A stretch of DNA of 64,000 nt, taken from the IMG/VR virus record IMGVR_UViG_3300032236_000747, positions 248,001 through 312,000 of that record; one strand, written 5' to 3'. The notes under the pieces were generated by a model that saw only the letters and a program-made list of their open reading frames with translations, did not search any database and had not been told where the DNA came from. Position numbers and translations under genes: made by a program. Of the stretch, positions 15,674 to 33,514 are shown one piece after another (position 1 is the stretch's first letter; each line of letters opens with the position of its first letter).

Positions 15674-15713
15674 ATTGTACACGATTGACAGATCCTGGTC
15701 AATAGTGTATAAT
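15674..15713. promoter_or_regulatory. Overlapping divergent sigma70 promoters
   Basis: Plus strand TTGACA(15685)-17-TATAAT(15708); minus strand TTGACC(15702)-17-TACAAT(15679); the two -35 boxes form the palindrome ATTGAC-N8-GTCAAT. Confidence 0.75.
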
Positions 15714-17577: not shown

Positions 17578-18039
17578 ATGATAACCTTAGAGGAATTCCA
17601 CTCTTTTATTGAAAACGATATAGTATATCTCCAGAACTTACTATACTACATTGATGCTCAAGGGCAAGAGCATAAAATCAACAACCTGGGTCATCTTCAT
17701 TCCTTGTACGGGAATACCATAAAACTAGAAGGTGCCGAGAAATACAATAAAGCTCTCTTTGACTATTGTCAATCTTTCAAACACTCGGGTCCAGTAACTT
17801 GCCACATCTTTAGATCCTTCGCAGGCTCACATAGTTTTCCAACCCATGTAGATCCAGATGATGTACACCTTAGGTTGCTATATGGACAGAAAACTATTAT
17901 ACTAGAAGATACAGAACATATTTTGAATCCCAACGACTGCTTATACATACCTGCCAATACTCCCCATCGTGCAATAAACAACGAAGAGTCTTTGATGTTA
18001 AGCATAGGACTTGAAAAGTTTCTTATTGATAAACTATGA
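17578..18039 (+). CDS. Cupin / JmjC-like oxygenase
   Basis: SFPTHVDPDDV...GQK...L.PNDCLYIPANTPHRA. Confidence 0.8.
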   Translation: MITLEEFHSFIENDIVYLQNLLYYIDAQGQEHKINNLGHLHSLYGNTIKLEGAEKYNKALFDYCQSFKHSGPVTCHIFRSFAGSHSFPTHVDPDDVHLRLLYGQKTIILEDTEHILNPNDCLYIPANTPHRAINNEESLMLSIGLEKFLIDKL

Positions 18040-19094
18040 ATTGGCTTTTCTATTTAAAAACTACAGAGACCTGTAATCTCAACTGTAAACATTGTTTCAC
18101 CAATGGAACCAGCGGAGCAAAGATCTATTGGAACAAAGAAAAAGTCAGTAAGTGGTTAAAGGATTTTAGAGAAGAAGTTGGTCCTGGGCATTCAGCTCAC
18201 TGTGAGTTTCATGGGGGAGAGCCATTCCTTGTTGATGTAGAAGAAATGAAACAAGTATACGATGAATGTAAAGACCTTTGGAATAATATGTCATGGGGTG
18301 TAACAACTAATCTCGTATTCAAACTATCTCCTTCTATCATAGAGTTTATTAAAGGGCCCTTAGACAATAGATTAGCTACGAGTTGGGATCCTGATATTAG
18401 ATTTGCTAATCCTAAACAGTATGACCTTTGGAGGAACAATGTTAGGACATTGATAAACGAAGGAGTTACTCTTAAATTGTTTGTCAGTGTTACAAAAGGC
18501 ACAGTTAAAATGAACCCCATTGATCTCTTAGAGTGGATTAGAGACCTGGGAGTGAAAGAAGTAAGTTTTGAGAGATTAACGCACAACGGTAGCGCAAACA
18601 AAAACCCTGATATATTTCCCAGCAACGTAGAACAAGATGCTTGGTTCCTTAGAATGCATCAACAGAGCGAACAGGCAAACGCTAGAACTTGGTTTAATAA
18701 CGAGTTTCTAGAAAATGTTTATACAAAGTTTGAATCCGGATTTAACAAAGCAGGAACTTTCTGCAGGGACTGTGAGGAAAAACTCTTTACGTTAAACGCA
18801 GATGGTTCTATTGCCGGATGCCCAAACAGTGCTCCGGAACAGTATTTCGGACATATAGATACTAGAATACACGATCTACTCAAAGACCCTGCTAGAATAA
18901 ACAACATAGCCTGTGAAAGATCTAGAGATCCTAGGTGTTATTCCTGTGATGTTTTTGAGTTTTGTGGAGGAGACTGCCATCAGTTATCCTGGGAAGACGA
19001 TCAGTGTGGTGCACCTAGAAGCTTGATGCAGTTGTTAGCAGGTATAAATACTCTAAGAAGTCAAAAGATCTTTAAAATAGAGGAAATTAAATGA
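18036..19094 (+). CDS. Radical SAM/SPASM peptide- or protein-maturase-like enzyme 1
   Basis: CNLNCKHC, FHGGEP, SPASM-type CRDC...GCP...C..C...CGGDC...C. Confidence 0.92.
   Translation: MNWLFYLKTTETCNLNCKHCFTNGTSGAKIYWNKEKVSKWLKDFREEVGPGHSAHCEFHGGEPFLVDVEEMKQVYDECKDLWNNMSWGVTTNLVFKLSPSIIEFIKGPLDNRLATSWDPDIRFANPKQYDLWRNNVRTLINEGVTLKLFVSVTKGTVKMNPIDLLEWIRDLGVKEVSFERLTHNGSANKNPDIFPSNVEQDAWFLRMHQQSEQANARTWFNNEFLENVYTKFESGFNKAGTFCRDCEEKLFTLNADGSIAGCPNSAPEQYFGHIDTRIHDLLKDPARINNIACERSRDPRCYSCDVFEFCGGDCHQLSWEDDQCGAPRSLMQLLAGINTLRSQKIFKIEEIK
19043..19050 (+). promoter_or_regulatory. T4-type late promoter TATAAATA upstream of the putative precursor
   Basis: Perfect consensus inside the 3' end of rSAM1, 40 nt before ATG 19091; SD GAGG present. 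Confidence 0.6.
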
Positions 19095-19750
19095 CAACGT
19101 TAAATAATCCGGTCACCTCCCAAAATATTGTTGATAGATTCTACGATTACGTAAACTATACAGCTAGTCAAGGAGTCACTTGGGGTAGTGATGTTATTCC
19201 AGCGGGCGATACTAGCCCAGTGAGCGGAGTTGCTGCATCAGTACCTATTATAGCCAGCACGGATTTTGCAGGGACAGTGGCCGCGGTTACTGATATTGCT
19301 ATTAACGGAGCAAGTATTGGATCATCCGGTGGTACTATTACAGCCTCTGACATTTGGTCGGTGCTGGTAAATGAAACAAGCAGAGAAACACATATTAGAT
19401 ATGTTCAAGCAATTTGCGGAGTAACGGGCACTGGTGGAAATGCTGGTACAAGATTGAGAAACACAACCACTAACAGTGATCCTAATCGTGTTCAAGACGT
19501 ATATAATCTTACAAGGGTAGCTAATATGAGGGCAGGTTTTGCAAGTGGCATAACCAATCCAGCTGCTTCAACCTACTCATTAACCGCTGGAAGTACTATT
19601 AGTTCAACTAACCTTGAATCTTTTTTCAGTGCTTGTCGAGACGCTTATAATAACGCTGCTAGAGCCACTGGATCAGCATATGTATATCGTACTAATGTAT
19701 GCCACGCTAGTTGCCACTCTAGTTGTCATAGTTCAAGAGGAAGAAGATGA
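19091..19750 (+). CDS. Putative modification substrate: Thr/Ser/Gly-rich structural-like protein with C-terminal (CHxS)3-RGRR core
   Basis: Ends NVCHASCHSSCHSSRGRR; embedded among rSAM genes; body has a fibre-like GxTIxxxxI/L motif twice. Confidence 0.7.
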   Translation: MTTLNNPVTSQNIVDRFYDYVNYTASQGVTWGSDVIPAGDTSPVSGVAASVPIIASTDFAGTVAAVTDIAINGASIGSSGGTITASDIWSVLVNETSRETHIRYVQAICGVTGTGGNAGTRLRNTTTNSDPNRVQDVYNLTRVANMRAGFASGITNPAASTYSLTAGSTISSTNLESFFSACRDAYNNAARATGSAYVYRTNVCHASCHSSCHSSRGRR

Positions 19751-20436
19751 ACATCATCGAAACAACAGCACCTATTTCTATAGATAATTTAAAGAAGTAT
19801 TTTGAAGATAAAGAAACTGTCTTTTTAATCGATTATGATAACTCTAATCTTAAAGAAGAAAAACTATTAACTTATCTTAGCAATCTAGAAATACCCTGCG
19901 ACCTAAACATAACAGACAATGATTATCTCTTACCGTTGATAACCTGTTATTTAAAATCTCCACATATGGTAGAAATCCCGTTTCTTGAAAGAATAACAAT
20001 TATTCTTCTCTTGCAACATAAAGGCATTTTAGAAAAACAAGATCTTACTATGTTAGAGTCTTTTAAAGAACTATTAGATCTATGGTGTGAAAGATTAGAT
20101 TCTCTAACATTATATAACTTATATTGTGTTAATGAAGACAATGATTATTTTAAAAACTGGGTATTAGAAACCGGTATAAAGGATGACACAACTGATATGT
20201 CAGGTTGTAACTTTGTTAATCTTTTAAAATATGAAGATTTCTATCGATTCTATCAAAAGAGCAGTTCGACTCCTAAATATTTTCCCTACTACTTTGACGA
20301 GTATGTATTCAAAGGGAAAAACTTATACAGTTATTGGGCCAACAATAACAACCCTATGTTTCTTTTAACATTTGGAATAGCTTCCGGTGTATTTGAACAA
20401 TTCAAGGAAAATTTAAATGCTACACCTATTCAATAA
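19747..20436 (+). CDS. Hypothetical protein in the rSAM cluster
   Basis: Translationally coupled ORF. Confidence 0.8.
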   Translation: MNIIETTAPISIDNLKKYFEDKETVFLIDYDNSNLKEEKLLTYLSNLEIPCDLNITDNDYLLPLITCYLKSPHMVEIPFLERITIILLLQHKGILEKQDLTMLESFKELLDLWCERLDSLTLYNLYCVNEDNDYFKNWVLETGIKDDTTDMSGCNFVNLLKYEDFYRFYQKSSSTPKYFPYYFDEYVFKGKNLYSYWANNNNPMFLLTFGIASGVFEQFKENLNATPIQ

Positions 20437-21520
20437 AGTCTATCTTGCTAGTGATTATACACTATGGAATATTCATGCTGACAAAATATTAATAATATCA
20501 GATCATTATGCCACTGAAGATACAAAAGGATATCAAGGATCTACCTATGTAGGTAAAAGTTTATCAGATGCTTTTGGAGAGAAAACACTGCATGATGTTT
20601 TATCAGAGTTTGCCGCAGGCACTGATAAAGTTATTATCTATGCCGATAACATAAGTTTTGCTGAAATCGCTGCTTCGTGGTTTAAGTCGATTACGCACAT
20701 GGATCAAACAGCCTACGATACATTTGTTGACTGTTATATCTATAAAAGGTCTGTTACTGGGCAAGATGTTGGTCAACTATCTGTTTTAATGAAACAACAG
20801 TTAGAGTCAGCACCGGCATATGATTTTTCTAATATAGCAGTTGATATGCCCTATGAGTTTTTATTAGCATCTGCTTTGGTCAATAGAGACTTTTCTAAGA
20901 AATCTCAGTTTTTAAAAACACAAGCTAAGTTTGTTAAGAGATCATATGAACACCTTATTCTAGAAGCACGCAGGCATTTGGACAACTATATATTAGATGC
21001 TAATTTACAAACAGCTCTAGGGGGCTCTGGTAAAACAATACAAAACTACAAAGAACTACCAAGCCTAGCTGCTTATAAAGAACCTTATTTTAAAGAAGCT
21101 GTTCCTGGGCCAGTAGTTCATAGCTATATTCCCGGACAAGGATCTAAGATCGATATTAGCCAAGGGTCTGATAGCGATATTGATGACCTATGCAGGGTTA
21201 CAAATATCATAAACGTTTCTATAGCAGGTATGACTATTTCAACAGGGCCCAATGGACCGGTTGTTTCTTCTAGTCCATATACAAACAACCTAAGAGCCGA
21301 TGATGGTAATGGTTGGAAATATCTAGCAGCAGCTAGAAGAGGCGAGCTAACCTCTGAAGAGTCTGATGCATTGTTAACTGAGTTCTTAGAACCTAGAGTG
21401 GCATTTGAGTTAGTCCCATTGGATCTATCACAAACTATTGTCATGGTACTACTCCCTTATTTTAAATCTCTTGCTAATAGCGGAAACACTACTGAGCTCA
21501 CTAAGTTTACACTAAAATAA
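20417..21520 (+). CDS. Accessory protein A, paralog of 26608..27714
   Basis: MLHLFNKVYL...KVIIYAD...EFLLA shared with the paralog. Confidence 0.8.
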   Translation: MLHLFNKVYLASDYTLWNIHADKILIISDHYATEDTKGYQGSTYVGKSLSDAFGEKTLHDVLSEFAAGTDKVIIYADNISFAEIAASWFKSITHMDQTAYDTFVDCYIYKRSVTGQDVGQLSVLMKQQLESAPAYDFSNIAVDMPYEFLLASALVNRDFSKKSQFLKTQAKFVKRSYEHLILEARRHLDNYILDANLQTALGGSGKTIQNYKELPSLAAYKEPYFKEAVPGPVVHSYIPGQGSKIDISQGSDSDIDDLCRVTNIINVSIAGMTISTGPNGPVVSSSPYTNNLRADDGNGWKYLAAARRGELTSEESDALLTEFLEPRVAFELVPLDLSQTIVMVLLPYFKSLANSGNTTELTKFTLK

Positions 21521-21521
21521 T

Positions 21522-22550
21522 ATGTCCTTGTATGATGTAATAGACAGGAAGGTCATAGACTATGCTGAGATTGTTGTCTGTTTATTTGATCATTGTAATC
21601 TACGCTGTGCTTTTTGTCCACAACATCACGATGATTTATTAGGTGCCTCTAGGGATGAAATATTAGCCAAGGTTCCGGGCATTGTTAACTGGATTAATAA
21701 TAATACTAGATCAAAGTATTTTAAAATTCATATAATGGGCGGCGAAGTATTTGAAGATATCTTCATAGAACAAGGCTTTATTGAAATCTATCAGGATTTT
21801 ATAGATCAAATAAAAAATAGTGTTCCAAAAGAAAAACACGTTGAAATAAACTTTATAACAAACTTAGTTTTTCAAAAACATCAAACAGTTTTAGATTTTC
21901 TTAATATCAATAACCTAAAAGTTTCAACATCTTACGATCCTCGTGGTCGATTTACTGCTCAACAGTTTGAAACATTTAAAAATAACATAGAGATATTTAA
22001 AGACTATATTAGTATGTTTTCTGTAGTAACTACTAGACAAAACATTGAAGCAGTTATAAAAGGCGATAGTTATTTTGATTATCTATATCAAAACTTTGTT
22101 TGTGATTGGGATTCATTTATACCAGCAATAGCAGAAACAGCCGAAGCAATGATGCCTAGTGAACAAGAGTTATTAAACTTTTATAAACATCTCGTTGACC
22201 ATTATCCGGACTGTATTAATATAGAGTATTTTACTGGTAATGAAAAAGAAAATCACATGAGCTGCACAAGGGGAAACAGTTATACTATTCTAAGAGATGG
22301 TTCTATGCCCGGTGGATGCAGTGGTGCGGTGTTTCTTAAAGATGCTGAAACAAAAAACTTAGAATCAACTATCATATTACATAAGTTTTTTGATACCTAT
22401 GATTGTTTCTCGTGTGAGTATTTTAAGAAATGTCCTTTTACCTGTTTTATAAAAAATGACTACAAAAAAATTAAACGAGATCTCGGAAGCTGTGTTTTTA
22501 AAGAAACCTTTCGATACGTCGATTCAAAACATAAAAGTATCATTCATTAA
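21522..22550 (+). CDS. Radical SAM enzyme 2 with Cys-rich C-terminal domain
   Basis: CNLRCAFC, MGGE, CTRG...GGC...CFSCEYFKKCPFTC. Confidence 0.9.
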   Translation: MSLYDVIDRKVIDYAEIVVCLFDHCNLRCAFCPQHHDDLLGASRDEILAKVPGIVNWINNNTRSKYFKIHIMGGEVFEDIFIEQGFIEIYQDFIDQIKNSVPKEKHVEINFITNLVFQKHQTVLDFLNINNLKVSTSYDPRGRFTAQQFETFKNNIEIFKDYISMFSVVTTRQNIEAVIKGDSYFDYLYQNFVCDWDSFIPAIAETAEAMMPSEQELLNFYKHLVDHYPDCINIEYFTGNEKENHMSCTRGNSYTILRDGSMPGGCSGAVFLKDAETKNLESTIILHKFFDTYDCFSCEYFKKCPFTCFIKNDYKKIKRDLGSCVFKETFRYVDSKHKSIIH

Positions 22551-24255
22551 TCCACCTCACGCCGATTGGTGTTTGGCAAACAATGCTGCTTACTTAATGT
22601 TTCAATCGCATTACAGCAGACACGGCAAAAATAATAAAAAGGTAGAGTGGATACCGGCTCCTTATCGATTTGATCAGTATGAAAATGTTCAACAAATATT
22701 AAACGAAGTTGGGAAAGCTGATGTGTATCTATTTTCTAGTTACATATGGAACTATGATGTATGTGATAGTCTCGCCAGACTAATCAAAGATACCTATCCT
22801 ACAAGCATCTGCGTATTAGGTGGCCCGCAAATAGGAACTAACGAACCAAAGTTCTTAACATCTCGTTCTATGTATGATTATATACTGCGACCAACCAAAC
22901 CCGGTGAAGTATTTGTACAAGAACTTATTGATTCGTATTTCGATAACTTAGGATATCCTGATGTAGAAGATATTTCCTGGGAACTACGTAGCGATAAAAA
23001 ATGCGATCAGTTTATGCCAGATTATAGTGTGTACGAAGAACATATAGAATATCTAACCAATGCTAGAGAACATGCTCGTGAAAATGATCTAGAACCATTT
23101 TGTATTATTGAAACAACTCGAGGATGTCCTTATGCGTGTACCTATTGCGAATGGGGCGGAGGAATAGACAGTAAAATCTATAAGAAGCCTATTGATGTAG
23201 TAAAGCGTGATTTATTAGCATTAAAGAAAGCAGGCTATCGAGATGTTTACCTGACAGATGCTAACTTCGGAGCATTTAAAGATAGGGACTTAGAAATATT
23301 TAAGTTTGCGTGGGACAATGAAATAAATCTAACTGACATCAGTACTATGAAAAGCAAGGATTTGAAAAGAAGAACAGATCTAGTCGATGCATGGTTTAGC
23401 GTTGTAGGATCCGGGCCAGAAAAACACAGCCCTGTTATAACAGGAAGAGAAGGCGGACAAGCTCTTGTTGCCGGACTAGGTGAAATGTCAGCTTTATCAA
23501 ACGATGTTTCTTATATTAGTATTGTACCAACAGTATCTATTCAAAGTATCAGCGATGAAGCTATGAAAGTAGCTAAACGTGCTGACCTATCCTTTCAAGA
23601 TAAAATAAAACTCAGCGAGCATATAAACAATCAGTGCCACAAAGAAGGATATCCTGTTCCTGCTATTGAGTTAATAATGGGAATGCCAGGCAGTACTATT
23701 GATGATTTCTATGCTGAATGGGAAATAATGTGGAACTTCAAAGCATGGACTAGTTATCGACACGATTATATGTTCTTGCCTGACTCCGAGTTAACTAATC
23801 CAGAATATTTAAAAAAGTATGATATTACTCTAGTAGAAGTTTACAGTGATCTAGTAGACGAGTTTGGTATTGATAATCAAAATAGTCTTTATAAAAATAA
23901 ACGTAGTTATTTTAAAACTATATCGTCTTGCTTCTCTTATACATTCGACGAAATGTGTGAAATGTGGTTCATGAATCTAGCTGAGAACAGACTATTAGAA
24001 AAAATATATCCAATGTTTGAAAATGATATTTTACCGAGCGAGTTTGGAAAAATGTGTTATCGAATATTATCTCAAACAGATGAGTTTGCTGTTATCCATA
24101 AACAAATACAAGACCTACTAGATCCAAATACATCTCCAAAAAATATCAAAAGATTGAATGGTAAACTAAGAAACTTTGCTATTGATGACCTCACTGATAA
24201 GTACAGAACTATCATTGTTTCTCAAATATACAAGGAGATGTTATGCATCAACTAA
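22456..24255 (+). CDS. Cobalamin-binding (class B-like) radical SAM enzyme; start uncertain
   Basis: B12 domain FSSYIWN...VLGGPQ; ETTRGCPYACTYC; DANFG; ELIMGMPG. Confidence 0.88.
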   Translation: MTTKKLNEISEAVFLKKPFDTSIQNIKVSFINPPHADWCLANNAAYLMFQSHYSRHGKNNKKVEWIPAPYRFDQYENVQQILNEVGKADVYLFSSYIWNYDVCDSLARLIKDTYPTSICVLGGPQIGTNEPKFLTSRSMYDYILRPTKPGEVFVQELIDSYFDNLGYPDVEDISWELRSDKKCDQFMPDYSVYEEHIEYLTNAREHARENDLEPFCIIETTRGCPYACTYCEWGGGIDSKIYKKPIDVVKRDLLALKKAGYRDVYLTDANFGAFKDRDLEIFKFAWDNEINLTDISTMKSKDLKRRTDLVDAWFSVVGSGPEKHSPVITGREGGQALVAGLGEMSALSNDVSYISIVPTVSIQSISDEAMKVAKRADLSFQDKIKLSEHINNQCHKEGYPVPAIELIMGMPGSTIDDFYAEWEIMWNFKAWTSYRHDYMFLPDSELTNPEYLKKYDITLVEVYSDLVDEFGIDNQNSLYKNKRSYFKTISSCFSYTFDEMCEMWFMNLAENRLLEKIYPMFENDILPSEFGKMCYRILSQTDEFAVIHKQIQDLLDPNTSPKNIKRLNGKLRNFAIDDLTDKYRTIIVSQIYKEMLCIN

Positions 24256-24749
24256 AAGAAAACATTTACAAATACGGATATCATCAACTATTTGAACCTA
24301 GTGCCCTTGATTTAATAAAAGCAGACGAGTTTCGTTTACTCAATGTAGAAGAGCGCAGTAGAGATAATATGATAAAAGATGTACCAACAGAGTTATCAAA
24401 TAGATTAACTACAGTTGCTCATTATTTTAAAACCAAATATATAGATCCTGTATGGGAGAACTCTAGATACAATAAATTTACTATCTGGGAAGGTGTTGAT
24501 CGTGACAACCAAGGATGGCATACTGATTTCTTTGAAGGTTATGATTTATTCTTTCTCTACTACCTTGATGACACATTTGAAGAATCTGGAGGGTATATTG
24601 AGTTTAAATGGGACAGCGGCGAAAAACGTTATCAACCAAAAGCAGGAGATCTGTTTTTAGTTAACAACCTACGTGGCTTCTGGCATCGTGCTGGCAGTTC
24701 TACTATATCTCGTCGTGTAGCAAGTTTTGATTTTAACGCAGGTATCTAA
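24243..24749 (+). CDS. Fe(II)/2-oxoglutarate oxygenase
   Basis: WHTD...GG...P.AGD...WHRA...RRV. Confidence 0.8.
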   Translation: MHQLKENIYKYGYHQLFEPSALDLIKADEFRLLNVEERSRDNMIKDVPTELSNRLTTVAHYFKTKYIDPVWENSRYNKFTIWEGVDRDNQGWHTDFFEGYDLFFLYYLDDTFEESGGYIEFKWDSGEKRYQPKAGDLFLVNNLRGFWHRAGSSTISRRVASFDFNAGI

Positions 24750-24750
24750 A

Positions 24751-25056
24751 ATGCAACAAGTTATTAATGATCTATTAGAAAAGAAGAAAATCCTAGGAGA
24801 TGAAAGAGACCTATGCGCTGAAGTTTATAATGTGTGGATTACTAGGATGTACGAGTGCCAGGACGATCCTGTTAAGTATGAAATGTATATAAACATGATA
24901 CAGGTTATGGAACCATATGGCCAAATGGTTAAAGAGGAAATAAGAGAAATAAATCGTCAGCTTTGTGAAATAGAAGGTGTAGATTCTATAGACGAAACTC
25001 CTTATCTTAGAGAATGCAACAACAAGTATGGAAACGCAAAACCAAACGATATCTGA
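24751..25056 (+). CDS. Small helical hypothetical protein
   Basis: ATG at 24751 directly after the upstream stop. Confidence 0.75.
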   Translation: MQQVINDLLEKKKILGDERDLCAEVYNVWITRMYECQDDPVKYEMYINMIQVMEPYGQMVKEEIREINRQLCEIEGVDSIDETPYLRECNNKYGNAKPNDI

Positions 25057-25552
25057 TATTGGCAACGATTTTCTTATTAATGGATTTGCTACCGGTCTAG
25101 TTCCTCTTGATTTATTAACTCCGTTTAATAACACATATTTTCCTGATTGTAATATAGACTGTGATTATGTGTTTCCGGAAGAAGTTATAAATTTATTAAC
25201 ACCTGTGTGCGATTGGTTAAAAATAAACTATCTAGAAACATTGTTTGCTGACTATAGAGTACATTACATAGGAGCATGGAGTGGAGTCGATGAAGGCTCA
25301 GCAAGATGGCACAACGACTGGATTGATGGCGACCCATTTAATACAAACATTCTTGTATATCTAGATCCTCCATTAGAAAACTATATAGCAGTTAGAAATA
25401 TACTTGATCCGGACAGCGAAACTAAGATATATCCAGAAGTTGGGCAGTTTGTTTGGATCAATCAACAAAAACACATACAACACAAAGCACAACATACTGC
25501 TGGCCCTAGAAGATTATTGTGCTTTGAATTCTTCGTACCTAACCTAACCTAA
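25028..25552 (+). CDS. Fe(II)/2-oxoglutarate oxygenase, paralog of 24243..24749
   Basis: W.GVD...WHND...LVYLD...QHKA...RR. Confidence 0.8.
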   Translation: METQNQTISDIGNDFLINGFATGLVPLDLLTPFNNTYFPDCNIDCDYVFPEEVINLLTPVCDWLKINYLETLFADYRVHYIGAWSGVDEGSARWHNDWIDGDPFNTNILVYLDPPLENYIAVRNILDPDSETKIYPEVGQFVWINQQKHIQHKAQHTAGPRRLLCFEFFVPNLT

Positions 25553-25556
25553 CAAA

Positions 25557-26648
25557 ATGGATCTTATCATTAAACCTACAGAAGTATGTAACTTCAAATG
25601 TACATTTTGTTCATCTACAAAAATCAGTGAAGAACATAGTTCAACACTAGACTTAGATTACGTGTTTAAGTTTCTAAAAAGATTTCCGGAAACTAATACA
25701 ATAATAGTCAATGGTGGAGATCCATTGATGATGCCTGTTAACTATTATTGGGAGATTATTAACTGGCTAGATCAACACAACTACGATCACACTACTCTTA
25801 GTCTTACAACTAATCTTTGGCCATTTTATAAAAATCCAGATAAATGGATTGAGCTATTCAAACATCCAAGGGTTGGCGTTAGTACATCGTTCCAATATGG
25901 TAACGGCCGTCTTAAAGGCAACTATGAAGTCTTTACAGAAGATGACTTTTGGGCAGCATCGAATATGATGCTAGATAAAATAGGTTATCGACCTACCTTC
26001 ATTGCTGTTATCACAGAAGAAAACGAAGACAGCATTATTAAAACAGTAGAGCTTGCTAAGAAGATGGATGTTGTTTGTAAAGTAAATTACGGAATGGCAT
26101 CCGGAGACCAGTCAACTCCATATATGTTATCAAAGATATATAAGGCCTATATAGATATATGGAAGGCGGGACTTTATCCCTGGGAACATAATACGCAGCA
26201 GATGATGACTCGATTAAAAGGAACAGCGACAATCTGCCCACAGGCCCGAAACTGTGATTCGCATATAAGAACACTTCAACCAGAAGGAGATTACTATTCC
26301 TGCGGTGCATTCGGCGACGACAAGGAAAAACCTATTAACTTTGAAGAAGAAATGAGTGGTAAGTTTTTTACACCGTTGTCTGATGACTTTGACATTGCTA
26401 CAATGAAACAATCCTGTTATACTTGTGCTATGTTTGAAATCTGTAATGGTTGCAGAAAAACCGTTAAAGATCAAAAGAGACACGGAATGGTAGAAGAACA
26501 TTGTAAGATGATGAAGTCTCTCGCTCCTGATATAATAACAGCCAATGGAGTTGTTAGGGAAGTTACCCCTTATGTTAAAGAAAGCAATCAAAGAATAATA
26601 AGGATAGTTGATGATACATTTGTTCAACCAAGTTTACCTATCTTATGA
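25557..26648 (+). CDS. Radical SAM/SPASM enzyme 4
   Basis: IIKPTEVCNFKCTFC, NGGDP, CP...C...YSC...CYTC..FEICNGC...C. Confidence 0.92.
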   Translation: MDLIIKPTEVCNFKCTFCSSTKISEEHSSTLDLDYVFKFLKRFPETNTIIVNGGDPLMMPVNYYWEIINWLDQHNYDHTTLSLTTNLWPFYKNPDKWIELFKHPRVGVSTSFQYGNGRLKGNYEVFTEDDFWAASNMMLDKIGYRPTFIAVITEENEDSIIKTVELAKKMDVVCKVNYGMASGDQSTPYMLSKIYKAYIDIWKAGLYPWEHNTQQMMTRLKGTATICPQARNCDSHIRTLQPEGDYYSCGAFGDDKEKPINFEEEMSGKFFTPLSDDFDIATMKQSCYTCAMFEICNGCRKTVKDQKRHGMVEEHCKMMKSLAPDIITANGVVREVTPYVKESNQRIIRIVDDTFVQPSLPIL

Positions 26649-27714
26649 TAATATCATAGATGAAAACATTGATAGAGTAGTAATATCAGAAGAGTTTGGT
26701 AAACATATGTTGCAGTATGCCGCTAGGCCTTCCCACGGGGCATTGTTGTATGCTGGCATGGATATTAATGACCTAGCAACAAATGGTATTAGTGATTTCT
26801 TTAACAACCTAGCAACGCATAAAAATAAAGTTGTTATCTATGCTAGTAGAGATTCGTTCTTAGAAATATTAGTGTTATGGTTTACTTCTCTATTAAAACA
26901 TGCCGACAAAGATACAGTACAAACATTGTGTAAGGCTTTGATCTTTAGGATAGTTGTGTTTTCAAATGGAAGATTTATCACACGCAGCGATAAAAACAAA
27001 ACTGAATATTCGCCGCAATACTACGAGTTCCCACAGGCCGACTTTGATTCATACTATAAGCTAGCACTTGAGTCTAACTTAGATCTAGCACCATTTCTAA
27101 ATAACATAGGTGTTGAGTATATGCTAGCAACATATCTTTACAGCGGTCATTATAAAGAAGAACTTAAATCTTTATTAAAACCCTTGATAAGAAAAGATAT
27201 GATAAAATATCTCTACGAGCTCAAAGAGATATTTCTTGTACATTTAATGACTCCTGCCTTTACAAATAAGATGTCATTAACTAAAGATTATGATTTTAAT
27301 ACATTTACTGATATTATAAATGATGATTCTAGATTTGCTAAAACATTCATGTCTACTCAAATATGGGAAACTCCTTTTATGTCAGCATATGGAAACCATG
27401 ATATCTTTTTAGAAAATATAACTCCAGAAGATATTCAAGTGTTTAAAGACTTTACTCATATTGCTGGAAACACATGGATAGAAGAAAGTGTTTATATATT
27501 TGTTAAATCAGATATTAATAAACTAGACTTTCTAGCTTGTTTTTTAGATTTTACAGATGATCTACTCGATAAGATTATAGAGGCTGAATCAACATTTGAG
27601 CACTCAGCTGGATCTTTCTTTTCTATAGACGTGACTACTGTTAATCATTATCTTGTACAAGGTCTTTTAAAAAATAGAAACAATAAAGAATATCTAAGAT
27701 TGTATTCAATATGA
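26608..27714 (+). CDS. Accessory protein B, paralog of 20417..21520
   Basis: MIHLFNQVYL...KVVIYAS...EYMLA. Confidence 0.8.
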   Translation: MMIHLFNQVYLSYDNIIDENIDRVVISEEFGKHMLQYAARPSHGALLYAGMDINDLATNGISDFFNNLATHKNKVVIYASRDSFLEILVLWFTSLLKHADKDTVQTLCKALIFRIVVFSNGRFITRSDKNKTEYSPQYYEFPQADFDSYYKLALESNLDLAPFLNNIGVEYMLATYLYSGHYKEELKSLLKPLIRKDMIKYLYELKEIFLVHLMTPAFTNKMSLTKDYDFNTFTDIINDDSRFAKTFMSTQIWETPFMSAYGNHDIFLENITPEDIQVFKDFTHIAGNTWIEESVYIFVKSDINKLDFLACFLDFTDDLLDKIIEAESTFEHSAGSFFSIDVTTVNHYLVQGLLKNRNNKEYLRLYSI

Positions 27715-28643
27715 ACATTTCTATTAACCCTTGGTACTACTGTAACTTTCGCTGCGATTTTTGTTATCTAACCACGCAACAGTTATCAGATAAGCAGTTA
27801 CTAGATCTCGATGTACTAGAAACACGTCTAAGAGAAATACCCTCTCCTATTGATCAGGTAGATCTATACGGGGGTGAGATAGGTCTTCTTCCTAAAGAGT
27901 ATTTTCAAAGACTCAAAGAAATCTGTAAAAGATACACTGATAAAATAAACATTATTACAAACTTATCTACAGTAAACAGCATTACCACAGATGAAGATTG
28001 CTATATATCAGTTAGCTATGATTTTGACTGTAGGGAAAATCACGAAATAGTTTTTAAAAATATGATGCTATTAGAAAGACCATTTTCTATTTTAATGCTA
28101 GCTGGAGATAAACTAATAGAGAAAGATGTTAGCCATATGATTAATATGTTTAATCTTATAGGAAACTTGGAATCAGTTGAGATTAAACCTTACAGTAGCA
28201 ACCAAGCTAATCAACAAACGGTTACTTTTAAACAGTTTGAAGATTTTATAATAAAATGGATTGATAGCCCTATTAAGAAAAACTTTTCTTTTATAAACGA
28301 GTTCCTAATAGAAGATGTATTAGATAAAACTAGAAACAGTTTTTCCGATGATCACATTTACATAACTCCTAGTGGTAGATATGCTGTTTTAGAATTTGAT
28401 TTAAATGACAATGAGTTCTTTCTTGAATATGATACATTTCAGGACTACCTAAACTGGTGTTCGATTGAAAAGAAACGAACACACAAGAACTCCTATTGTA
28501 ATCAATGCGAGTATAACGGTCATTGTCTATCTGAACACCTGAGAGATGTCAAAGATCTAAATAATAGTTGTAACGGATTTAAACATCTGATAGATTGGTA
28601 TAAGAATGAAAGACTGGAAGATTCGACAAGAAGTTTATCATAA
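27711..28643 (+). CDS. Radical SAM enzyme 5
   Basis: CNFRCDFC, LYGGE, CNQCEYNGHC...SCNG. Confidence 0.9.
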   Translation: MNISINPWYYCNFRCDFCYLTTQQLSDKQLLDLDVLETRLREIPSPIDQVDLYGGEIGLLPKEYFQRLKEICKRYTDKINIITNLSTVNSITTDEDCYISVSYDFDCRENHEIVFKNMMLLERPFSILMLAGDKLIEKDVSHMINMFNLIGNLESVEIKPYSSNQANQQTVTFKQFEDFIIKWIDSPIKKNFSFINEFLIEDVLDKTRNSFSDDHIYITPSGRYAVLEFDLNDNEFFLEYDTFQDYLNWCSIEKKRTHKNSYCNQCEYNGHCLSEHLRDVKDLNNSCNGFKHLIDWYKNERLEDSTRSLS

Positions 28644-29010
28644 ACTAAATCGTTCACACACGGATGATTTAAACTCAGTTGATATAATAAACACTACCGA
28701 AACAGTAAAAGATGCTGTAAGATATTTTCACGAAACAAACATTGGATGGATATATCCTTCAAAGAGTTATATGGTTGCTATATGTTATGCTAGATGGCTA
28801 GGCGAAAACTTCGGCGGTGATCCTTACGAATATCTAAATGATCCTGATTTGCTTTATGGAAACGATCCTTATTTTATTCCCTATAGAGAATCAAAAAAAG
28901 AATACGATCAAATTTTGATTGATATTAATGGTTGGCAGTTTTCCGAAACTTCAGGTATGGTGCCCGATGTTAAACAATATTTCCTAGAGGAGTTCATGAT
29001 AGATGTATGA
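28606..29010 (+). CDS. Hypothetical protein in the rSAM cluster
   Basis: Overlapping operon ORF. Confidence 0.8.
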   Translation: MKDWKIRQEVYHKLNRSHTDDLNSVDIINTTETVKDAVRYFHETNIGWIYPSKSYMVAICYARWLGENFGGDPYEYLNDPDLLYGNDPYFIPYRESKKEYDQILIDINGWQFSETSGMVPDVKQYFLEEFMIDV

Positions 29011-29629
29011 TGATTTACACAGCCCTTCGGGCAAGGGCAATAGCTGGGGCACTGGCAATAAACTAACCAACGGAGTTAACTTACTGTGGCCTAATCAAGT
29101 TCTATCCGGTAATATAGAAGAAAAGGATTTGTTAGATAAGTTTTCTCAAACTATATTCGAATCTGTAGATTTTTCATCTAATAGATTTTCGGAGTTTGAT
29201 CCGTTAATAGAAGGTCCAGAGATTTGTCAAGAGTTTAAAAATAAAGTTGTTGTGCCCTGCTTTGAAAAGTATCTTAACAACATGGGGCTAAATCTACAAT
29301 CCTTTGGAAACTATAGACTTAAATCTTGGATAACCGGATCAAAAGAAGGATACTCAATATCAGCACACAATCATAGCGGTGCTAGTTTAAGTGCTGTGTT
29401 TTATCTTTTAGTAGGGAATAGAGTAACCGGAGGGGACCTTGTAATAATAGACCCTAGGACCAATGCTAACCGAGGATACCTAGATGCATTTAAACCATTT
29501 TTTGAAAATAAGGTCTTTACACCGCAGTCTGGGGAATATATAATCATACCCGGATATCTTTATCATCATACTACTACATTTTATGGATCACTGAGGCTTG
29601 CTATGCCGGTAGATTTGTTTTTGAGTTAA
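29003..29629 (+). CDS. Putative Fe(II)/2OG oxygenase, phage type
   Basis: HNH...LSAVFYL...DPR...PGYLYH...R. Confidence 0.8.
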   Translation: MYDDLHSPSGKGNSWGTGNKLTNGVNLLWPNQVLSGNIEEKDLLDKFSQTIFESVDFSSNRFSEFDPLIEGPEICQEFKNKVVVPCFEKYLNNMGLNLQSFGNYRLKSWITGSKEGYSISAHNHSGASLSAVFYLLVGNRVTGGDLVIIDPRTNANRGYLDAFKPFFENKVFTPQSGEYIIIPGYLYHHTTTFYGSLRLAMPVDLFLS

Positions 29630-29955
29630 ACTCTAAAACTTTCGCCGCAGCCACAACGGTCGCGTTCATTAGGATTTCTAAACTCAAACCCTTCATTTAA
29701 TCCATTTCGAACATAATCTACAGTTGTTCCTAAAATATATGGAAGGTGTCTGGTGTAAATCTTGATTATGAAATCCGGATAGATAATGCGCTCTTCACTA
29801 GGGTCAAAGGAATCTGGATAGTTTAACCATTCTAAAGTATAAGCTAAACCACTACACCCTGTAGTTTTAACTCCTATCCTAAGTCCTACACTAGCTCCTC
29901 GTTTTATTTTCAACTGTTTAATCTTGTCTAGGGCTTGCTCTGTTAGTGTGATCAT
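29626..29955 (-). CDS. iscA: Fe-S cluster assembly A-type carrier IscA
   Basis: GVKTTGCSGLAY...GLNEGFEFRNPN...CGCGESF. Confidence 0.93.
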   Translation of the reverse strand: MITLTEQALDKIKQLKIKRGASVGLRIGVKTTGCSGLAYTLEWLNYPDSFDPSEERIIYPDFIIKIYTRHLPYILGTTVDYVRNGLNEGFEFRNPNERDRCGCGESFRV

Positions 29956-29993
29956 GTTATTATTTACAATAAATACAATCTAGGGAGAAACAT

Positions 29994-30287
29994 ATGAAAA
30001 AGATCCTTCTAACATTTATCATAGCATTAGCGGCAGTACCTGCAATGGCGCAGTGGCATCATCATCATTGCTGTTATCGAGGCGGATGGGTTGGTCCTGC
30101 CCTCATAGGTGGTGTAGTCGGATATGAGTTATCTCGCCCTCGTACAGTAGTTGTTGAACAACCTATTATTGTACAACAACCACAACAACCTATTATTGTA
30201 CCTAGCGCCGCCCCTGCTGGATATCATTGGCAACAAATGATCAATCCACAAACAAATCAATATCAACTAGTACTGGTACCTAACTAA
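29994..30287 (+). CDS. Small secreted Pro/Gln-rich protein with HHHHCC near the mature N-terminus
   Basis: Signal peptide MKKILL...AMA; SD; TAAATA at 29970. Confidence 0.75.
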   Translation: MKKILLTFIIALAAVPAMAQWHHHHCCYRGGWVGPALIGGVVGYELSRPRTVVVEQPIIVQQPQQPIIVPSAAPAGYHWQQMINPQTNQYQLVLVPN

Positions 30288-30288
30288 T

Positions 30289-30420
30289 ATGAAACTACGT
30301 AAACTAAGAAAAAAGATGTACAAGGCTATATTCAATCATGATGTAGCAAAAGAAAGAAAAACTTGGCTCAAGATTCTTAAAAAATCTATGAAGCACAAAC
30401 ACACCGCAGACGTTCAATAA
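30289..30420 (+). CDS. Small basic protein (43 aa, MKLRKLRKKMYKAIF...)
   Basis: Manual translation; fills the gap, stop overlaps the iscU start. Confidence 0.6.
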   Translation: MKLRKLRKKMYKAIFNHDVAKERKTWLKILKKSMKHKHTADVQ

Positions 30421-30803
30421 TGGCATATTCGGATAAAGTAATAGATCATTACGAGAATCCTAGAAATGTAGGAAAGTTTGACATCGACGATAGTATAGGC
30501 ACGGGCATGGTCGGAGCTCCTTCTTGCGGTGATGTTATGAAACTACAAATCAAAGTAAATGAAGAAGGTATCATTGAAGATGCAAGATTTAAAACATATG
30601 GATGCGGTTCAGCAATCGCATCAAGCTCACTTATCACAGAGCTTGTCAAAGGAATGTCTCTTGACCAGGCGACAGCTATTAAAAACAGCGACATCGCCGA
30701 GGAGTTGGCTCTTCCACCTGTTAAGATTCACTGCTCAATCCTCGCAGAAGACGCAATCAAAGCAGCAGTAATAGATTATAAAAAGAAGAATAATCTGTTG
30801 TGA
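30420..30803 (+). CDS. iscU: Fe-S scaffold IscU
   Basis: YSDKVIDHYENPRNVG, APSCGDVM, GCGSA, LPPVKIHCS. Confidence 0.96.
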   Translation: MAYSDKVIDHYENPRNVGKFDIDDSIGTGMVGAPSCGDVMKLQIKVNEEGIIEDARFKTYGCGSAIASSSLITELVKGMSLDQATAIKNSDIAEELALPPVKIHCSILAEDAIKAAVIDYKKKNNLL

Positions 30804-30811
30804 TCTAACTT

Positions 30812-31552
30812 ATGTTTCAATCAATTTTTCCACCTGCAATAGTTAGAGAACATAGACAAGAAAAACCCAGCAAAGTTTCTAGTGCTAGATTTAGTAATGA
30901 TGAAATACTGGGAAGAGCACTGTTTAGGTCAACTAATAAGTTGAAAGGGAAAGACGGAAGAACATACAACTACATAGATAAAAATGGGGAATATGTTAGT
31001 TCTAGGATTAGCCCTTATAGCCCTTATATAGATGATAATATAGAACCCGGTGTATACGATATAGTTAAATCATTATTAAACAAAGGATACTTAACTGTTA
31101 GTAGTTGTCAAGGACATAGTGATAGGAAATTTAGATTTGTTACGGTTGCTTTTAAAACACAACAAAACTCTGATGAATTTAAAGATGTGTTGATTAACTC
31201 TAAAGTTCCACTACATTTTCAAAAAGTTTCCAAAAATACCGGCTTTTCATTTGTATATGATCAAAATAGATATAACGGTAAAGAACTAGCTGGTGAAGAA
31301 TACAGGAATGTCCCTTATTCTGAATCAGATCTTGTTAAATATCTTAACATAATGTTTTTAAGGAACTACTCCGAATATCATCTATTACAAGTAAGGATAG
31401 CATCTGAACCAGATATAGAGTCTGTAGGAATATTAAAATATATTTTATCAAAGCCATATTATTTTGTTCTATATCAGTTTAGAGATTATTTCACTAAAAA
31501 ACTAGTTTCTTACATTAATACGTACTTAAAAGATTATTCGGACAAACTATGA
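30812..31552 (+). CDS. Hypothetical protein with TYW3-like T.SSC.G motif
   Basis: [26 protein letters not shown]. Confidence 0.55.
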
Positions 31553-31881
31553 ATATTACAATTTCAGATTCTTGTGTATCAAAAATAAAAGACCTTCTTC
31601 TAGAAGAAAATAATCCTTTGTTGAATCTGCGTACATTTGTCCAGGGCGGTGGCTGTTCAGGAATGCAGTACGGATTTACCTTTGATGAAGAAATCAACGA
31701 AGATGATTTTATCTTAGAACAGTCCGGATTTAAAATATTAATAGATAGCATGAGCTATCAGTATCTTCAAGGATCTACCGTTGATTACAAAGAAGATCTA
31801 CAAGGTAGCCGGTTTGTTATTCAAAACCCAAATGCCCAAACAACCTGTGGTTGTGGCAGCTCGTTTAGTGTAGCAGAATAA
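31549..31881 (+). CDS. erpA: Fe-S insertion protein ErpA (A-type carrier)
   Basis: [21 protein letters not shown]...DSMSYQYL...[14 protein letters not shown]. Confidence 0.92.
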
Positions 31882-31887
31882 CAACGG

Positions 31888-31916
31888 TTGACAGCATTGG
31901 TAAAATCCTGTATAAT
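31888..31916 (+). promoter_or_regulatory. sigma70 promoter TTGACA-17-TATAAT with TGGTAAAA spacer motif
   Basis: Perfect consensus upstream of the ligase. Confidence 0.85.
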
Positions 31917-31943
31917 ATTAGCATTAAACAACTAGGAATACCA

Positions 31944-33269: not shown

Positions 33270-33270
33270 T

Positions 33271-33513
33271 ATGGATAAATCAGCAGTAAAAGATCTATTG
33301 TTCGGCGGCATTAATGAGTTAATGCGTAACCGAAACTACTACTATCACAGTAGTGTAGGTGCCGGGTACTCGCACTGGACAGATGAGGGCAAAAAGGCAC
33401 TCGCAGAGTATATGGATGTAATGGGCTGGAAACTTAGAGAAGCTGAAGAAGCTGATTTAAAGAAACGCTCGAAGGAAATGGTTATGCAAGGATTAAAAGG
33501 AGAATCAGTTTAA
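33271..33513 (+). CDS. Hypothetical protein
   Basis: Start moved to the ATG at 33271, just after the ligase stop. Confidence 0.75.
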
Positions 33514-33514
33514 A

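What the first reader, a model, noticed from the sequence alone, without database searches (positions are those of the whole stretch)
29626..31881. IscA, IscU and ErpA placed directly beside the rSAM cluster
Seen: three intact Fe-S biogenesis genes with conserved Cys motifs and the IscU LPPVK motif. No iscS or hscAB is present in the window. Known: each rSAM/SPASM enzyme needs one to three [4Fe-4S] clusters. Inference: these genes boost cluster delivery to the phage maturases rather than general host metabolism. iscA has a late-type TAAATA back-to-back with a second one (29961-29975).
Basis: partly seen in the sequence, partly recalled or inferred. Interest (0 to 1): 0.6.

Follow-up and report, generated by a model that had tools for sequence, protein, structure and literature searches.

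The report
Phage iron-sulfur carrier gene module
A 355-kb uncultured jumbo phage carries intact IscU, IscA and ErpA iron-sulfur carrier genes, a module shared by hundreds of related phage contigs. It probably raises Fe-S cluster supply during infection in general, and it is not tied specifically to the radical-SAM cluster beside it, an idea already published for other viruses.

Summary
Window 29626-29955(-) is an IscA-like A-type carrier, 30420-30803(+) is IscU (all ligands and LPPVK present) and 31549-31881(+) is ErpA. No cysteine desulfurase, HscA/HscB or ferredoxin was found in the 354,680-bp phage record. The back-to-back TAAATA motifs are real, and TAAATA is the most enriched hexamer upstream of starts genome-wide.

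IMG/VR holds at least 599 contigs with an IscU relative. Of the best 80 (81-89% identical), 79 are phage contigs with IscU plus IscA and sometimes ErpA, and none of those has iscS. The window's IscU sits in a virus-only clade. The module lies in different neighbourhoods: beside ribonucleotide reductase, beside UvdE and superoxide dismutase, or at the window's locus. One syntenic relative (L034) keeps IscU-ErpA in the same slot with no rSAM cluster there. Across 50 related records, rSAM genes are not enriched within 10 kb of IscU.

Some points favour a link. The clade is rSAM-rich. Five of this genome's six rSAM genes are in the adjacent cluster. Other relatives carry non-orthologous rSAM clusters in the same slot. 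One rSAM-cluster gene (orf246) sits inside the isc operon.

Viral IscU and A-type carriers serving viral rSAM enzymes were proposed in 2017. Verdict: a new member of a known kind.

The parts
29626..29955 (-). IscA-like A-type Fe-S carrier (ATC-II), 109 aa. Its 3' end overlaps by 4 nt, tail to tail, the last gene of the rSAM cluster.
   Evidence: PF01521 at 51 bits; TIGR00049 at 91 bits (cut-off 58.8); TIGR02011 at 109 bits (below 150.6). It is 49.5% identical to Acinetobacter IscA. Cys34, Cys101 and Cys103 are invariant. It matches phrog_17776.
29961..29966 (-). TAAATA promoter-like motif for iscA. The spacing is TAAATA-N5-ATG, which leaves no room for a Shine-Dalgarno site (leaderless-type).
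   Evidence: The same N5 spacing recurs at about 22 genes in the genome.
29970..29975 (+). TAAATA promoter-like motif for the small97-orf43-iscU-orf246-erpA transcription unit. It lies 18 nt before the ATG, with GGGAGA at 29983-29988.
   Evidence: Spacing class -23 to -31, shared with the giant (more than 2000 aa) genes.
29994..30287 (+). small97: a 97-aa protein with a signal peptide, a His run (HHHHCC), a glycine-zipper hydrophobic segment (GWVGPALIGGVVGYE) and a P/Q-rich tail. It is a phage-specific companion of IscU. Function unknown.
   Evidence: No Pfam, NCBIfam or PHROG hit. Homologues lie directly upstream of IscU in at least 20 of 80 phage loci and in L195 and L197. There are 171 clusters, all metagenomic, with longest contigs of 260-363 kb.
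30289..30420 (+). A 43-aa basic ORF whose stop overlaps the iscU start (TAATG). Possibly translationally coupled; unverified.
   Evidence: Read from the sequence. No Pfam hit.
30420..30803 (+). IscU Fe-S scaffold, 127 aa.
   Evidence: PF01592 at 178 bits; TIGR01999 at 215.9 bits (cut-off 192.4). Ligands and LPPVK are invariant. It matches phrog_8429. It sits in a virus-only clade of 44 (SH-aLRT 96). Third codon positions are 47% identical at 84% amino-acid identity.
30812..31552 (+). orf246: an AT-rich (30% GC) protein of unknown function. In relatives it belongs to the rSAM cluster. Here it is inserted between iscU and erpA, and its stop overlaps the erpA start.
   Evidence: No family hit. 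There are 24 homologous clusters. In L191/L192 it lies between homologues of rSAM 27711-28643 and ORF 28606-29010. In L193/L194 it lies between the 2OG oxygenase and IscA(-).
31549..31881 (+). ErpA (ATC-I) Fe-S insertion protein, 110 aa.
   Evidence: NF010147 at 173 bits (cut-off 117). Conserved Cys. It is 63-75% identical in 19 of 80 related phage loci.
31888..31916 (+). Perfect sigma-70 consensus (TTGACA-17-TATAAT) ahead of the ATP-dependent DNA ligase gene. It marks the right boundary of the isc unit.
   Evidence: ligase domains.
17578..29629 (+). The adjacent low-GC, co-directional rSAM cluster (context only). It comprises a JmjC/cupin protein; rSAM/SPASM-like enzymes at 18036-19094 and 25557-26648; rSAM at 21522-22550; B12-rSAM at 22456-24255; rSAM at 27711-28643; and 2OG-Fe(II) oxygenases at 24243-24749 and 29003-29629.
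   Evidence: Gene GC is 29-37% against a genome value of 40.4%.
15685..15713 (+). Perfect sigma-70 consensus promoter heading the co-directional block 15797-29629 (Hydrolase_2 gene through the rSAM cluster).

Best explanation
The three genes form a conserved, phage-lineage-specific Fe-S 'carrier' module: the scaffold IscU, the type-II A-type carrier IscA and the type-I carrier ErpA. A phage-specific His-rich secreted or membrane protein often precedes them.

The phage encodes only the components that hold clusters stoichiometrically. It encodes no sulfur donor (IscS), reductant (Fdx) or release chaperones (HscA/HscB). The module must therefore plug into the host ISC machinery. This fits the near-bacterial sequence of its IscU (80-87% identity to beta- and gammaproteobacterial IscU), including the HscA-binding LPPVK motif.

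Inferred mechanism: expressed from TAAATA-type phage promoters, the module enlarges the pool of scaffold and carriers once host gene expression declines. More [2Fe-2S] and [4Fe-4S] clusters then reach apo-proteins along the route known from E. coli, IscU to IscA to ErpA to target.

The clients are probably all Fe-S proteins needed during infection. In this genome the largest phage-encoded demand is the adjacent five-enzyme rSAM cluster, plus QueE. The module is not dedicated to that cluster. It is older and far more conserved than any rSAM cluster, and the rSAM cluster is a variable, low-GC cassette that in this sub-lineage has landed next to it.

Shown: gene identity, conservation, distribution, synteny and lack of positional linkage. 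Inferred: host dependence, direction of cluster flow, clients and timing.
For: Identity and intact active sites.

No iscS, hscAB or fdx in the record.

Distribution. At least 599 IMG/VR contigs carry an IscU relative, and the best 80 are 81-89% identical to the window's. Of those 80, 79 have a phage context, IscA and sometimes ErpA, and no iscS. The full trio is present in 14.

Virus-only IscU clades of 44 and 24 members, each with SH-aLRT 96.

Strong purifying selection: amino-acid identity 84% with third-position identity 47%.

The module occurs in at least three different neighbourhoods. L034 keeps IscU-ErpA in the same slot without an rSAM cluster there.

No rSAM enrichment near IscU. rSAM clusters are non-orthologous between relatives.

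Composition. IscU is typical of the genome (40.6% GC). The rSAM genes and orf246 are at 29-37%.

The clade is rSAM-rich, and five of six rSAM genes here are adjacent.

The TAAATA motif is strongly enriched upstream of starts.

The same inference has been published for marine viruses (PMC5332604).

The IscU to IscA to ErpA order of transfer rests on established E. coli work (Vinella et al. 2009, from my own knowledge, not checked here).
Against: There is no expression or biochemical evidence. No RNA run holds the locus.

All related records are fragments (2-62% complete), so genome-wide presence or absence of rSAM genes cannot be scored. No isc-negative comparison group was available.

Within the sub-lineage sharing the window's locus organisation, most informative contigs do have an rSAM cluster within 10 kb upstream of IscA (window, L193/L194, L048, L044, L039). 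The one without it (L034) also lacks IscA. This could mean a tighter local coupling than I allow.

The record ends inside an Hsp70 gene, so a missing piece could in principle hold further isc genes.

The host is unknown, so compatibility with host IscS and HscA is inferred from sequence conservation only.
Confidence: 0.6

Rival explanations
1. One reading: the isc genes are a dedicated supply line for the adjacent rSAM/SPASM 'maturases'. They are placed beside them for co-regulation and do not serve general metabolism.
For: Five of six rSAM genes of the genome are adjacent. orf246, an rSAM-cluster gene in L191-L194, lies inside the isc operon and overlaps the erpA start. L193/L194 repeat the order rSAM cluster, orf246, IscA(-), IscU. 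L048 and L044 have other rSAM clusters in the same slot. L034 lacks both the slot's rSAM cluster and IscA. SPASM enzymes need up to three [4Fe-4S] clusters (established knowledge).
Against: Thirty-seven of 50 related records have no rSAM gene within 10 kb of IscU, and rSAM density near IscU is 0.61 times that elsewhere. The commonest neighbours are nrdAB-grx or UvdE and SOD. L034 keeps IscU-ErpA without the cluster in the slot. IscU is far more conserved than any rSAM cluster. iscA is convergent with the cluster, not co-transcribed with it. The cluster's block starts with a sigma-70 consensus promoter, whereas the isc genes have TAAATA motifs. Megaphages with an A-type carrier have no rSAM gene.
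Confidence: 0.2
2. The module mainly sustains or repairs host Fe-S enzymes (respiration, TCA cycle, isoprenoid synthesis), and possibly iron-dependent phage enzymes, under oxidative or UV stress or iron limitation in surface fresh water. This keeps the virocell energised during a long jumbo-phage infection. Phage rSAM enzymes would be incidental users.
For: In one group of relatives IscU-IscA directly follows UvdE and Fe/Mn superoxide dismutase. In another it flanks nrdA-nrdB-glutaredoxin. Phage C48C1 has IscU a few kb from a peroxiredoxin. ErpA's known clients in E. coli are respiratory complexes and IspG/IspH (Loiseau et al. 2007, cited in PMC13760526). Megaphages with an A-type carrier but no rSAM gene exist.
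Against: Neighbourhood is weak evidence of function. SOD, NrdB and the 2OG oxygenases use iron ions, not Fe-S clusters. The clade's rSAM richness is left unexplained.
Confidence: 0.15
3. The genes are not phage genes in use. They would be bacterial contamination, an assembly chimera, or a recently captured and decaying piece of a host isc operon.
For: IscU is as similar to bacterial IscU (80-87%) as to other phage IscU. Several 'phage' database hits are in fact bacterial isc operons.
Against: Phage genes flank both sides, and no iscR, iscS, hscB, hscA or fdx is present. The arrangement recurs in contigs from many independent metagenomes. Virus-only clades exist. All catalytic residues are intact and selection is purifying. 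Phage-type TAAATA motifs precede the genes.
Confidence: 0.03

Closest known systems
Viral Fe-S cluster auxiliary metabolic genes: IscU and A-type carriers in marine T4-like environmental viral genomes (Nishimura et al. 2017, PMC5332604), with PHROG families phrog_8429 (IscU) and phrog_17776 (A-type carrier)
   Same: These are phage-encoded IscU and/or A-type carriers without IscS. Some of those genomes also carry many rSAM genes (one has 12). The authors already infer that the carriers serve host and viral Fe-S proteins. The window's proteins hit both PHROG families.
   Different: Here all three relay members (IscU, IscA and ErpA) occur together. They are in a roughly 355-kb jumbo phage of a large clade with virus-only IscU lineages. 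They carry a conserved His-rich small-protein companion and a defined promoter motif. No bona fide phage record in the GenBank phage collection searched here has an ErpA-type gene; the best hits are bacterial or uncultured megaphages at 46-49% identity.
Bacterial ISC system (iscRSUA-hscBA-fdx plus the unlinked erpA), e.g. the Acinetobacter operon in L003
   Same: IscU is 73-87% identical with identical ligands and LPPVK. IscA is about 50% identical and ErpA 53-56%. The expected transfer order IscU to IscA to ErpA is the E. coli model.
   Different: IscR, IscS, HscB, HscA and Fdx are absent. iscA is inverted upstream of iscU. erpA is linked to iscU, whereas it is unlinked in bacteria. Two unrelated ORFs (small97, orf246) are interleaved. 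The promoters are phage-type.
Phage C48C1 (Kyanoviridae, OQ984149) NifU-like protein
   Same: It is the only clear hit to IscU from an isolate-type phage genome, at 76% identity, within a replication-gene region.
   Different: It has IscU alone, with no A-type carrier next to it. It has a single rSAM gene 58 kb away. The downstream ORF is unrelated to orf246.
Microcystis jumbo phage MaAM05/PhiMa05 sufC-sufD-sufS-sufU block
   Same: A jumbo phage record that carries Fe-S biogenesis genes and four rSAM genes.
   Different: It is SUF-type, includes its own cysteine desulfurase, and keeps a bacterial operon layout. Its scaffold is only 36% identical to the window's IscU.

Membership tests
IscU (TIGR01999 / PF01592 NifU_N) | Profile score above the curated cut-off | tested here: met
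   TIGR01999 at 215.9 bits against 192.4; PF01592 at 178 bits against 22.
IscU (TIGR01999 / PF01592 NifU_N) | Cluster ligands (three Cys, plus Asp and His) and the HscA-binding LPPVK motif | tested here: met
   C36, D38, C62, H104, C105 and L98-K102 are invariant in an alignment with Enterobacteriaceae, Acinetobacter and Neisseria IscU.
IscU (TIGR01999 / PF01592 NifU_N) | Assembles Fe-S clusters with IscS as sulfur donor | not testable with these tools
   No iscS in the record. The host is unknown.
ErpA (NF010147, ATC-I) | Equivalog score above the cut-off and three conserved Cys | tested here: met
   173.2 bits against 117. GGGCSG and CGCG are conserved.
IscA proper (TIGR02011 / NF007049 equivalogs, ATC-II) | Equivalog score above the cut-off | tested here: not met
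   109 bits against 150.6, and 97.9 against 181. It is best described as an IscA-like A-type carrier. The subfamily model TIGR00049 is met (91.3 against 58.8).
A-type carrier family (PF01521 / TIGR00049) | Domain present, with the C-x(n)-C-G-C cysteine triad | tested here: met
Complete ISC system | IscS, IscU, IscA, HscB, HscA and Fdx encoded together | tested here: not met
   Only IscU and the carriers are present. There is no Aminotran_5 hit and no HscB-type or Fdx hit. The Hsp70 is DnaK-type and the J-protein is DnaJ/CbpA-type.
Viral Fe-S auxiliary metabolic genes (phrog_8429, phrog_17776) | Match to the phage protein families and a phage genomic context | tested here: met
   E-values of 1.8e-40, 2.4e-31 and 1.2e-46. 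Phage flanks.
T4-type late promoter (TATAAATA read by a gp55-like sigma) | Motif over-represented at a fixed distance upstream of genes | tested here: met
   TAAATA occurs 48 times against 2.3 or 9.8 expected. It has two spacing classes and is depleted elsewhere.
T4-type late promoter (TATAAATA read by a gp55-like sigma) | Late timing and a phage sigma factor | tested here: inconclusive
   There is no Sigma70_r2 hit in the genome. No gp55-specific model was tried. No RNA data exist. The motif precedes giant, probably structural, genes, which is only suggestive.

The most novel reading that the evidence does not exclude
A widespread clade of roughly 355-kb jumbo phages keeps a phage-specific four-part module as near-core equipment: a His-rich secreted or membrane protein, plus IscU, IscA and ErpA. 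The clade is known only from metagenomes, and the study of freshwater lake viruses read here suggests a freshwater habitat. The module would be a self-contained Fe-S relay, possibly coupled to metal capture at the envelope. Its role would be to underwrite a hypervariable arsenal of non-orthologous radical-SAM cassettes that are swapped between phages and tend to land next to the module.
Probability: 0.2. Interest if true: 0.6.

Novelty: new member of a known kind. Interest (0 to 1): 0.35.

Why it matters
Phage-encoded Fe-S carriers have been catalogued as auxiliary metabolic genes for more than a decade, but in the literature I found they have not been tested biochemically. This clade offers a clean test case. 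It has a complete scaffold-to-ATC-II-to-ATC-I relay without the catalytic parts, in genomes that also encode many Fe-S-dependent radical-SAM enzymes. Showing that the relay works with host IscS and raises the yield of active rSAM enzymes would explain how jumbo phages afford such cofactor-expensive chemistry. It would also give a practical helper set for expressing rSAM enzymes. The present analysis mainly corrects the inference: adjacency here is a local arrangement, not a conserved coupling.

Tried and rejected
- **Megablast against GenBank phages.** Window 26000-34000 found no match.
- **Link between C48C1 and the window.** The ORF after C48C1's IscU is not related to orf246.
- **Bacterial records labelled as phage.** The 'Acinetobacter phage MD-2021a' hit examined is an ordinary bacterial isc operon. 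By their hosts and identities, the Salmonella, Escherichia and Staphylococcus 'phage' hits also look bacterial. I did not use them as phage evidence.
- **An Fe-S (Cas4-like) nuclease as a client.** The PD-(D/E)XK protein that neighbours the module in relatives has only two Cys, so I dropped this idea.
- **A phage HscA/HscB.** The Hsp70 is DnaK-type and the J-protein has a DnaJ_C domain, so they are not HscAB.
- **Expression data.** The only run holding the locus is the probable source metagenome, and there is no RNA. I therefore did not run read laying.
- **Orthology of rSAM clusters across relatives.** None was found beyond rSAM-core similarity, except in L193/L194.
- **Papers on freshwater jumbo-phage lineages.** PMC12619734 and PMC13573597 do not mention Fe-S genes. 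The amoC-phage preprint mentions only SufB.
- **Structure prediction and complex prediction.** I did not use them. Family membership is unambiguous from the profiles, and I claim no specific binding pair.
- **Host from the IscU tree.** The nearest bacterial IscU are Neisseriaceae, Burkholderiales and gammaproteobacteria, but support is weak with 127 columns, so no host call is justified.
Full report
**Setting.** The window is bases 248001-312000 of a 354,680-bp IMG/VR virus record (CheckV 100%, 'linear'). The record ends inside a DnaK-type Hsp70 gene, so it is not fully closed. Genome GC is 40.4%. The stretch at about 19.7-29.6 kb of the window, which holds most of the radical-SAM (rSAM) cluster, is a low-GC island with gene GC of 29-37%.

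**Observation.** Three intact ORFs sit at the stated coordinates.
- IscU (30420-30803, +) passes the IscU equivalog model: TIGR01999 at 215.9 bits against a 192.4 cut-off. Cys36, Asp38, Cys62, His104, Cys105 and LPPVK are invariant against bacterial IscU.
- ErpA (31549-31881, +) passes the ErpA equivalog: 173 bits against 117.
- The gene called iscA (29626-29955, -) is a true A-type carrier with the cysteine triad and IscA-like signature residues. It scores below the IscA equivalog cut-offs (109 against 150.6), so 'IscA-like ATC-II' is the accurate name.

The whole record has one NifU_N hit, two Fe-S_biosyn hits and no Aminotran_5 hit. tblastn with an Acinetobacter isc operon finds no IscR, IscS or Fdx. 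The Hsp70 and the J-protein it does find are DnaK-type and DnaJ/CbpA-type, not HscA/HscB.

The rSAM cluster next door is real. Five proteins carry CxxxCxxC, two of them SPASM-like and one B12-binding. The cluster also holds two 2OG-Fe(II) oxygenases and a JmjC/cupin protein. The only other rSAM gene in the genome is a QueE-like gene next to GTP cyclohydrolase I.

**Promoter claim.** The 38-bp divergent intergenic region reads TATTTA-CAA-TAAATA at 29961-29975.
- TAAATA is the most enriched hexamer in the 60 nt upstream of starts genome-wide: 48 observed, against 2.3 expected from genome background and 9.8 from shuffles of the same sequences.
- In the window as a whole it is depleted: 42 observed against 72 expected. 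That pattern fits a functional element.
- It occurs in two spacing classes. One is TAAATA-N5-ATG, found at about 22 genes including iscA, which leaves no room for a Shine-Dalgarno site. The other lies 23-31 nt upstream with a Shine-Dalgarno site; it includes small97 and several genes of more than 2000 aa.
- 'Late' is plausible but unproven. I found no sigma-like gene and no RNA run holds the locus.
- Perfect sigma-70 consensus promoters stand before the Hydrolase_2 gene that heads the co-directional block running into the rSAM cluster (15685-15713) and before the ligase gene (31888-31916). The rSAM block and the isc genes therefore do not obviously share one promoter class.
- iscA is convergent with the cluster, with a 4-nt overlap of 3' ends.

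**Anatomy of the isc unit.** From the TAAATA motif at 29970 the order is:
- small97 (29994-30287);
- a 43-aa ORF whose stop overlaps the iscU start (30289-30420);
- iscU;
- orf246 (30812-31552), whose stop overlaps the erpA start;
- erpA.

small97 has a signal peptide, a His run, a glycine-zipper hydrophobic segment and a P/Q-rich linker. It matches no known family. Homologues lie directly upstream of IscU in at least 20 of 80 related phage loci. They form 171 purely metagenomic clusters whose longest contigs are 260-363 kb.

orf246 is AT-rich (30% GC) and belongs elsewhere. In L191/L192 it sits between homologues of rSAM 27711-28643 and ORF 28606-29010. In L193/L194 it sits between the 2OG oxygenase and an inverted IscA that precedes IscU.

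**Relatives.**
- IMG/VR holds at least 599 contigs encoding a relative of the window's IscU, and the best 80 are 81-89% identical to it.
- Of those 80, only one has the bacterial iscR-iscS...hscB context. The other 79 have IscU, usually with IscA and sometimes ErpA, and no iscS. ErpA is present in 19 loci and the full trio in 14.
- These contigs share many other genes with this genome. CheckV's completeness estimates for the fragments imply genomes of about 350 kb.
- In an IscU tree with 80 bacterial sequences, the phage proteins form virus-only clades of 44 (including the window) and 24 members, each with SH-aLRT 96.
- Selection is purifying: 84% amino-acid identity with 47% identity at third codon positions.
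- The nearest bacterial IscU (80-87%) are from Neisseriaceae, Burkholderiales and gammaproteobacteria. Resolution is too low to name a host.

**Test of the linkage to rSAM genes.** The module occupies at least three neighbourhoods:
- (a) beside a PD-(D/E)XK nuclease and class Ia nrdA-nrdB-glutaredoxin;
- (b) directly after UvdE and Fe/Mn superoxide dismutase;
- (c) the window's locus, between a Hydrolase_2 block and ligase-IF1-HNH.

Within (c), three cases are informative.
- In L034 the Hydrolase_2 block abuts IscU-ErpA-ligase directly. There is no rSAM cluster and no IscA in the slot, and that record's five rSAM genes lie 22 kb away.
- L048 has a different cluster in the slot: three rSAM genes, DUF3050 and a JmjC-like cupin. 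A fatty-acid desaturase lies between ErpA and the ligase.
- L044 and L039 carry yet other rSAM genes 6 kb away.

Only L193/L194 carry homologues of the window's cluster.

Across 50 related records (2.09 Mb, 75 rSAM hits), 13 have an rSAM gene within 10 kb of IscU. rSAM density near IscU is 0.26 per 10 kb against 0.43 elsewhere. rSAM clusters of different relatives share 31% identity or less, or nothing.

Outside the clade, phage C48C1 (IscU only) has one distant rSAM gene. MaAM05 has a SUF block and four rSAM genes. Two megaphages with an A-type carrier have none.

**Interpretation.** The isc genes are an old, conserved, phage-adapted module. The rSAM cluster is variable, compositionally distinct cargo.

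The module encodes only the cluster-holding proteins, so it must draw on host IscS, Fdx and HscAB. The conserved LPPVK motif and the near-bacterial IscU sequence fit that reading.

The likeliest role is to increase Fe-S delivery capacity during infection for all clients. In this genome the adjacent rSAM enzymes are the largest identifiable phage-encoded demand: at least five [4Fe-4S] clusters, and more with the SPASM domains.

Local signs of coupling keep the dedicated-supply reading alive at lower probability. These are orf246 inside the isc operon, recurrent rSAM cassettes in the same slot, and the joint absence of IscA and the cassette in L034. A role in sustaining host Fe-S enzymes under oxidative stress also remains possible, given the SOD, UvdE, glutaredoxin and ribonucleotide-reductase neighbourhoods.

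**Comparison with what is known.** Viral iscU and A-type-carrier genes are long-known auxiliary metabolic genes. Nishimura et al. 2017 described T4-like environmental genomes with an A-type carrier and/or IscU plus up to 12 rSAM genes. They drew the same inference: the carriers serve host and viral Fe-S proteins (PMC5332604). PHROGs holds families for both proteins. A 2026 lake study lists iscU and erpA as viral auxiliary genes (PMC13760526).

Four details are new here:
- the full three-member relay including ErpA, which no bona fide phage record in the GenBank phage collection searched here carries;
- the size and virus-only phylogeny of the clade;
- the small97 companion;
- the promoter motif.

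**Limits.**
- All relatives are fragments.
- There is no isc-negative comparison group, no expression data and no known host.
- rSAM hits are clustered, so they are not independent events in the density test.

Noticed in passing
Genome-wide; in the window e.g. 10365-10370, 17170-17175, 29961-29966(-), 34284-34289(-), 34355-34360: About 22 genes have TAAATA exactly 5 nt before the start codon, which leaves no room for a Shine-Dalgarno site. This suggests a class of leaderless or near-leaderless phage mRNAs. A second class has the motif 23-31 nt upstream with a Shine-Dalgarno site.
   Followed up: partly
window 29994-30287: small97 is a phage-specific family: signal peptide, His run, glycine-zipper segment and P/Q linker, with two alternative C-terminal domains. 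It is conserved directly upstream of phage IscU and is absent from named genomes. It may handle metal at the envelope; function unknown.
   Followed up: partly
window 30812-31552; L191-L194: orf246 travels with the rSAM 27711-28643 and ORF 28606-29010 sub-module in other contigs. Here it has been displaced into the isc operon.
   Followed up: yes
window 33515-33733: A phage-encoded translation initiation factor IF-1 homologue (PF01176, 88 bits). It is conserved next to the ligase and an HNH endonuclease in relatives.
   Followed up: partly
G000 353816-354680 (L099 18816-19679) and G000 62885-63736: A DnaK-type Hsp70 gene is cut by the record's end, covering only profile positions 1-282 of 599. 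A DnaJ/CbpA-type co-chaperone is also present. The 'complete' record is therefore not closed.
   Followed up: partly
G000 166161-173126, 179331-186749, 190078-198075, 200933-206675: These are giant, extremely Cys-rich proteins, with 75, 115 and 140 Cys in 2321-2665 aa, preceded by TAAATA motifs. They are probably virion proteins. Whether they are substrates of the rSAM enzymes is an open thought.
   Followed up: no
window 15685-15713 and 31888-31916: Two perfect 12-of-12 sigma-70 consensus promoters (TTGACA-17-TATAAT). More of this type occur elsewhere in the genome. This implies that host RNA polymerase transcribes one gene class.
   Followed up: partly
L048 8403-9155 and 11175-12011: The relative's cassette at the same locus adds a DUF3050 (haem-oxygenase-like di-iron) protein and a fatty-acid desaturase around the isc genes. 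Iron-dependent enzymes therefore recur at this slot.
   Followed up: no
G000 84238-88858: A block with GTP cyclohydrolase I and a QueE-like rSAM gene, which suggests a 7-deazaguanine pathway (possibly DNA modification). It holds the genome's only rSAM gene outside the cluster.
   Followed up: no
G000 105001-120000: A second low-GC stretch (34.6-36.1%) elsewhere in the genome. I did not examine it.
   Followed up: no
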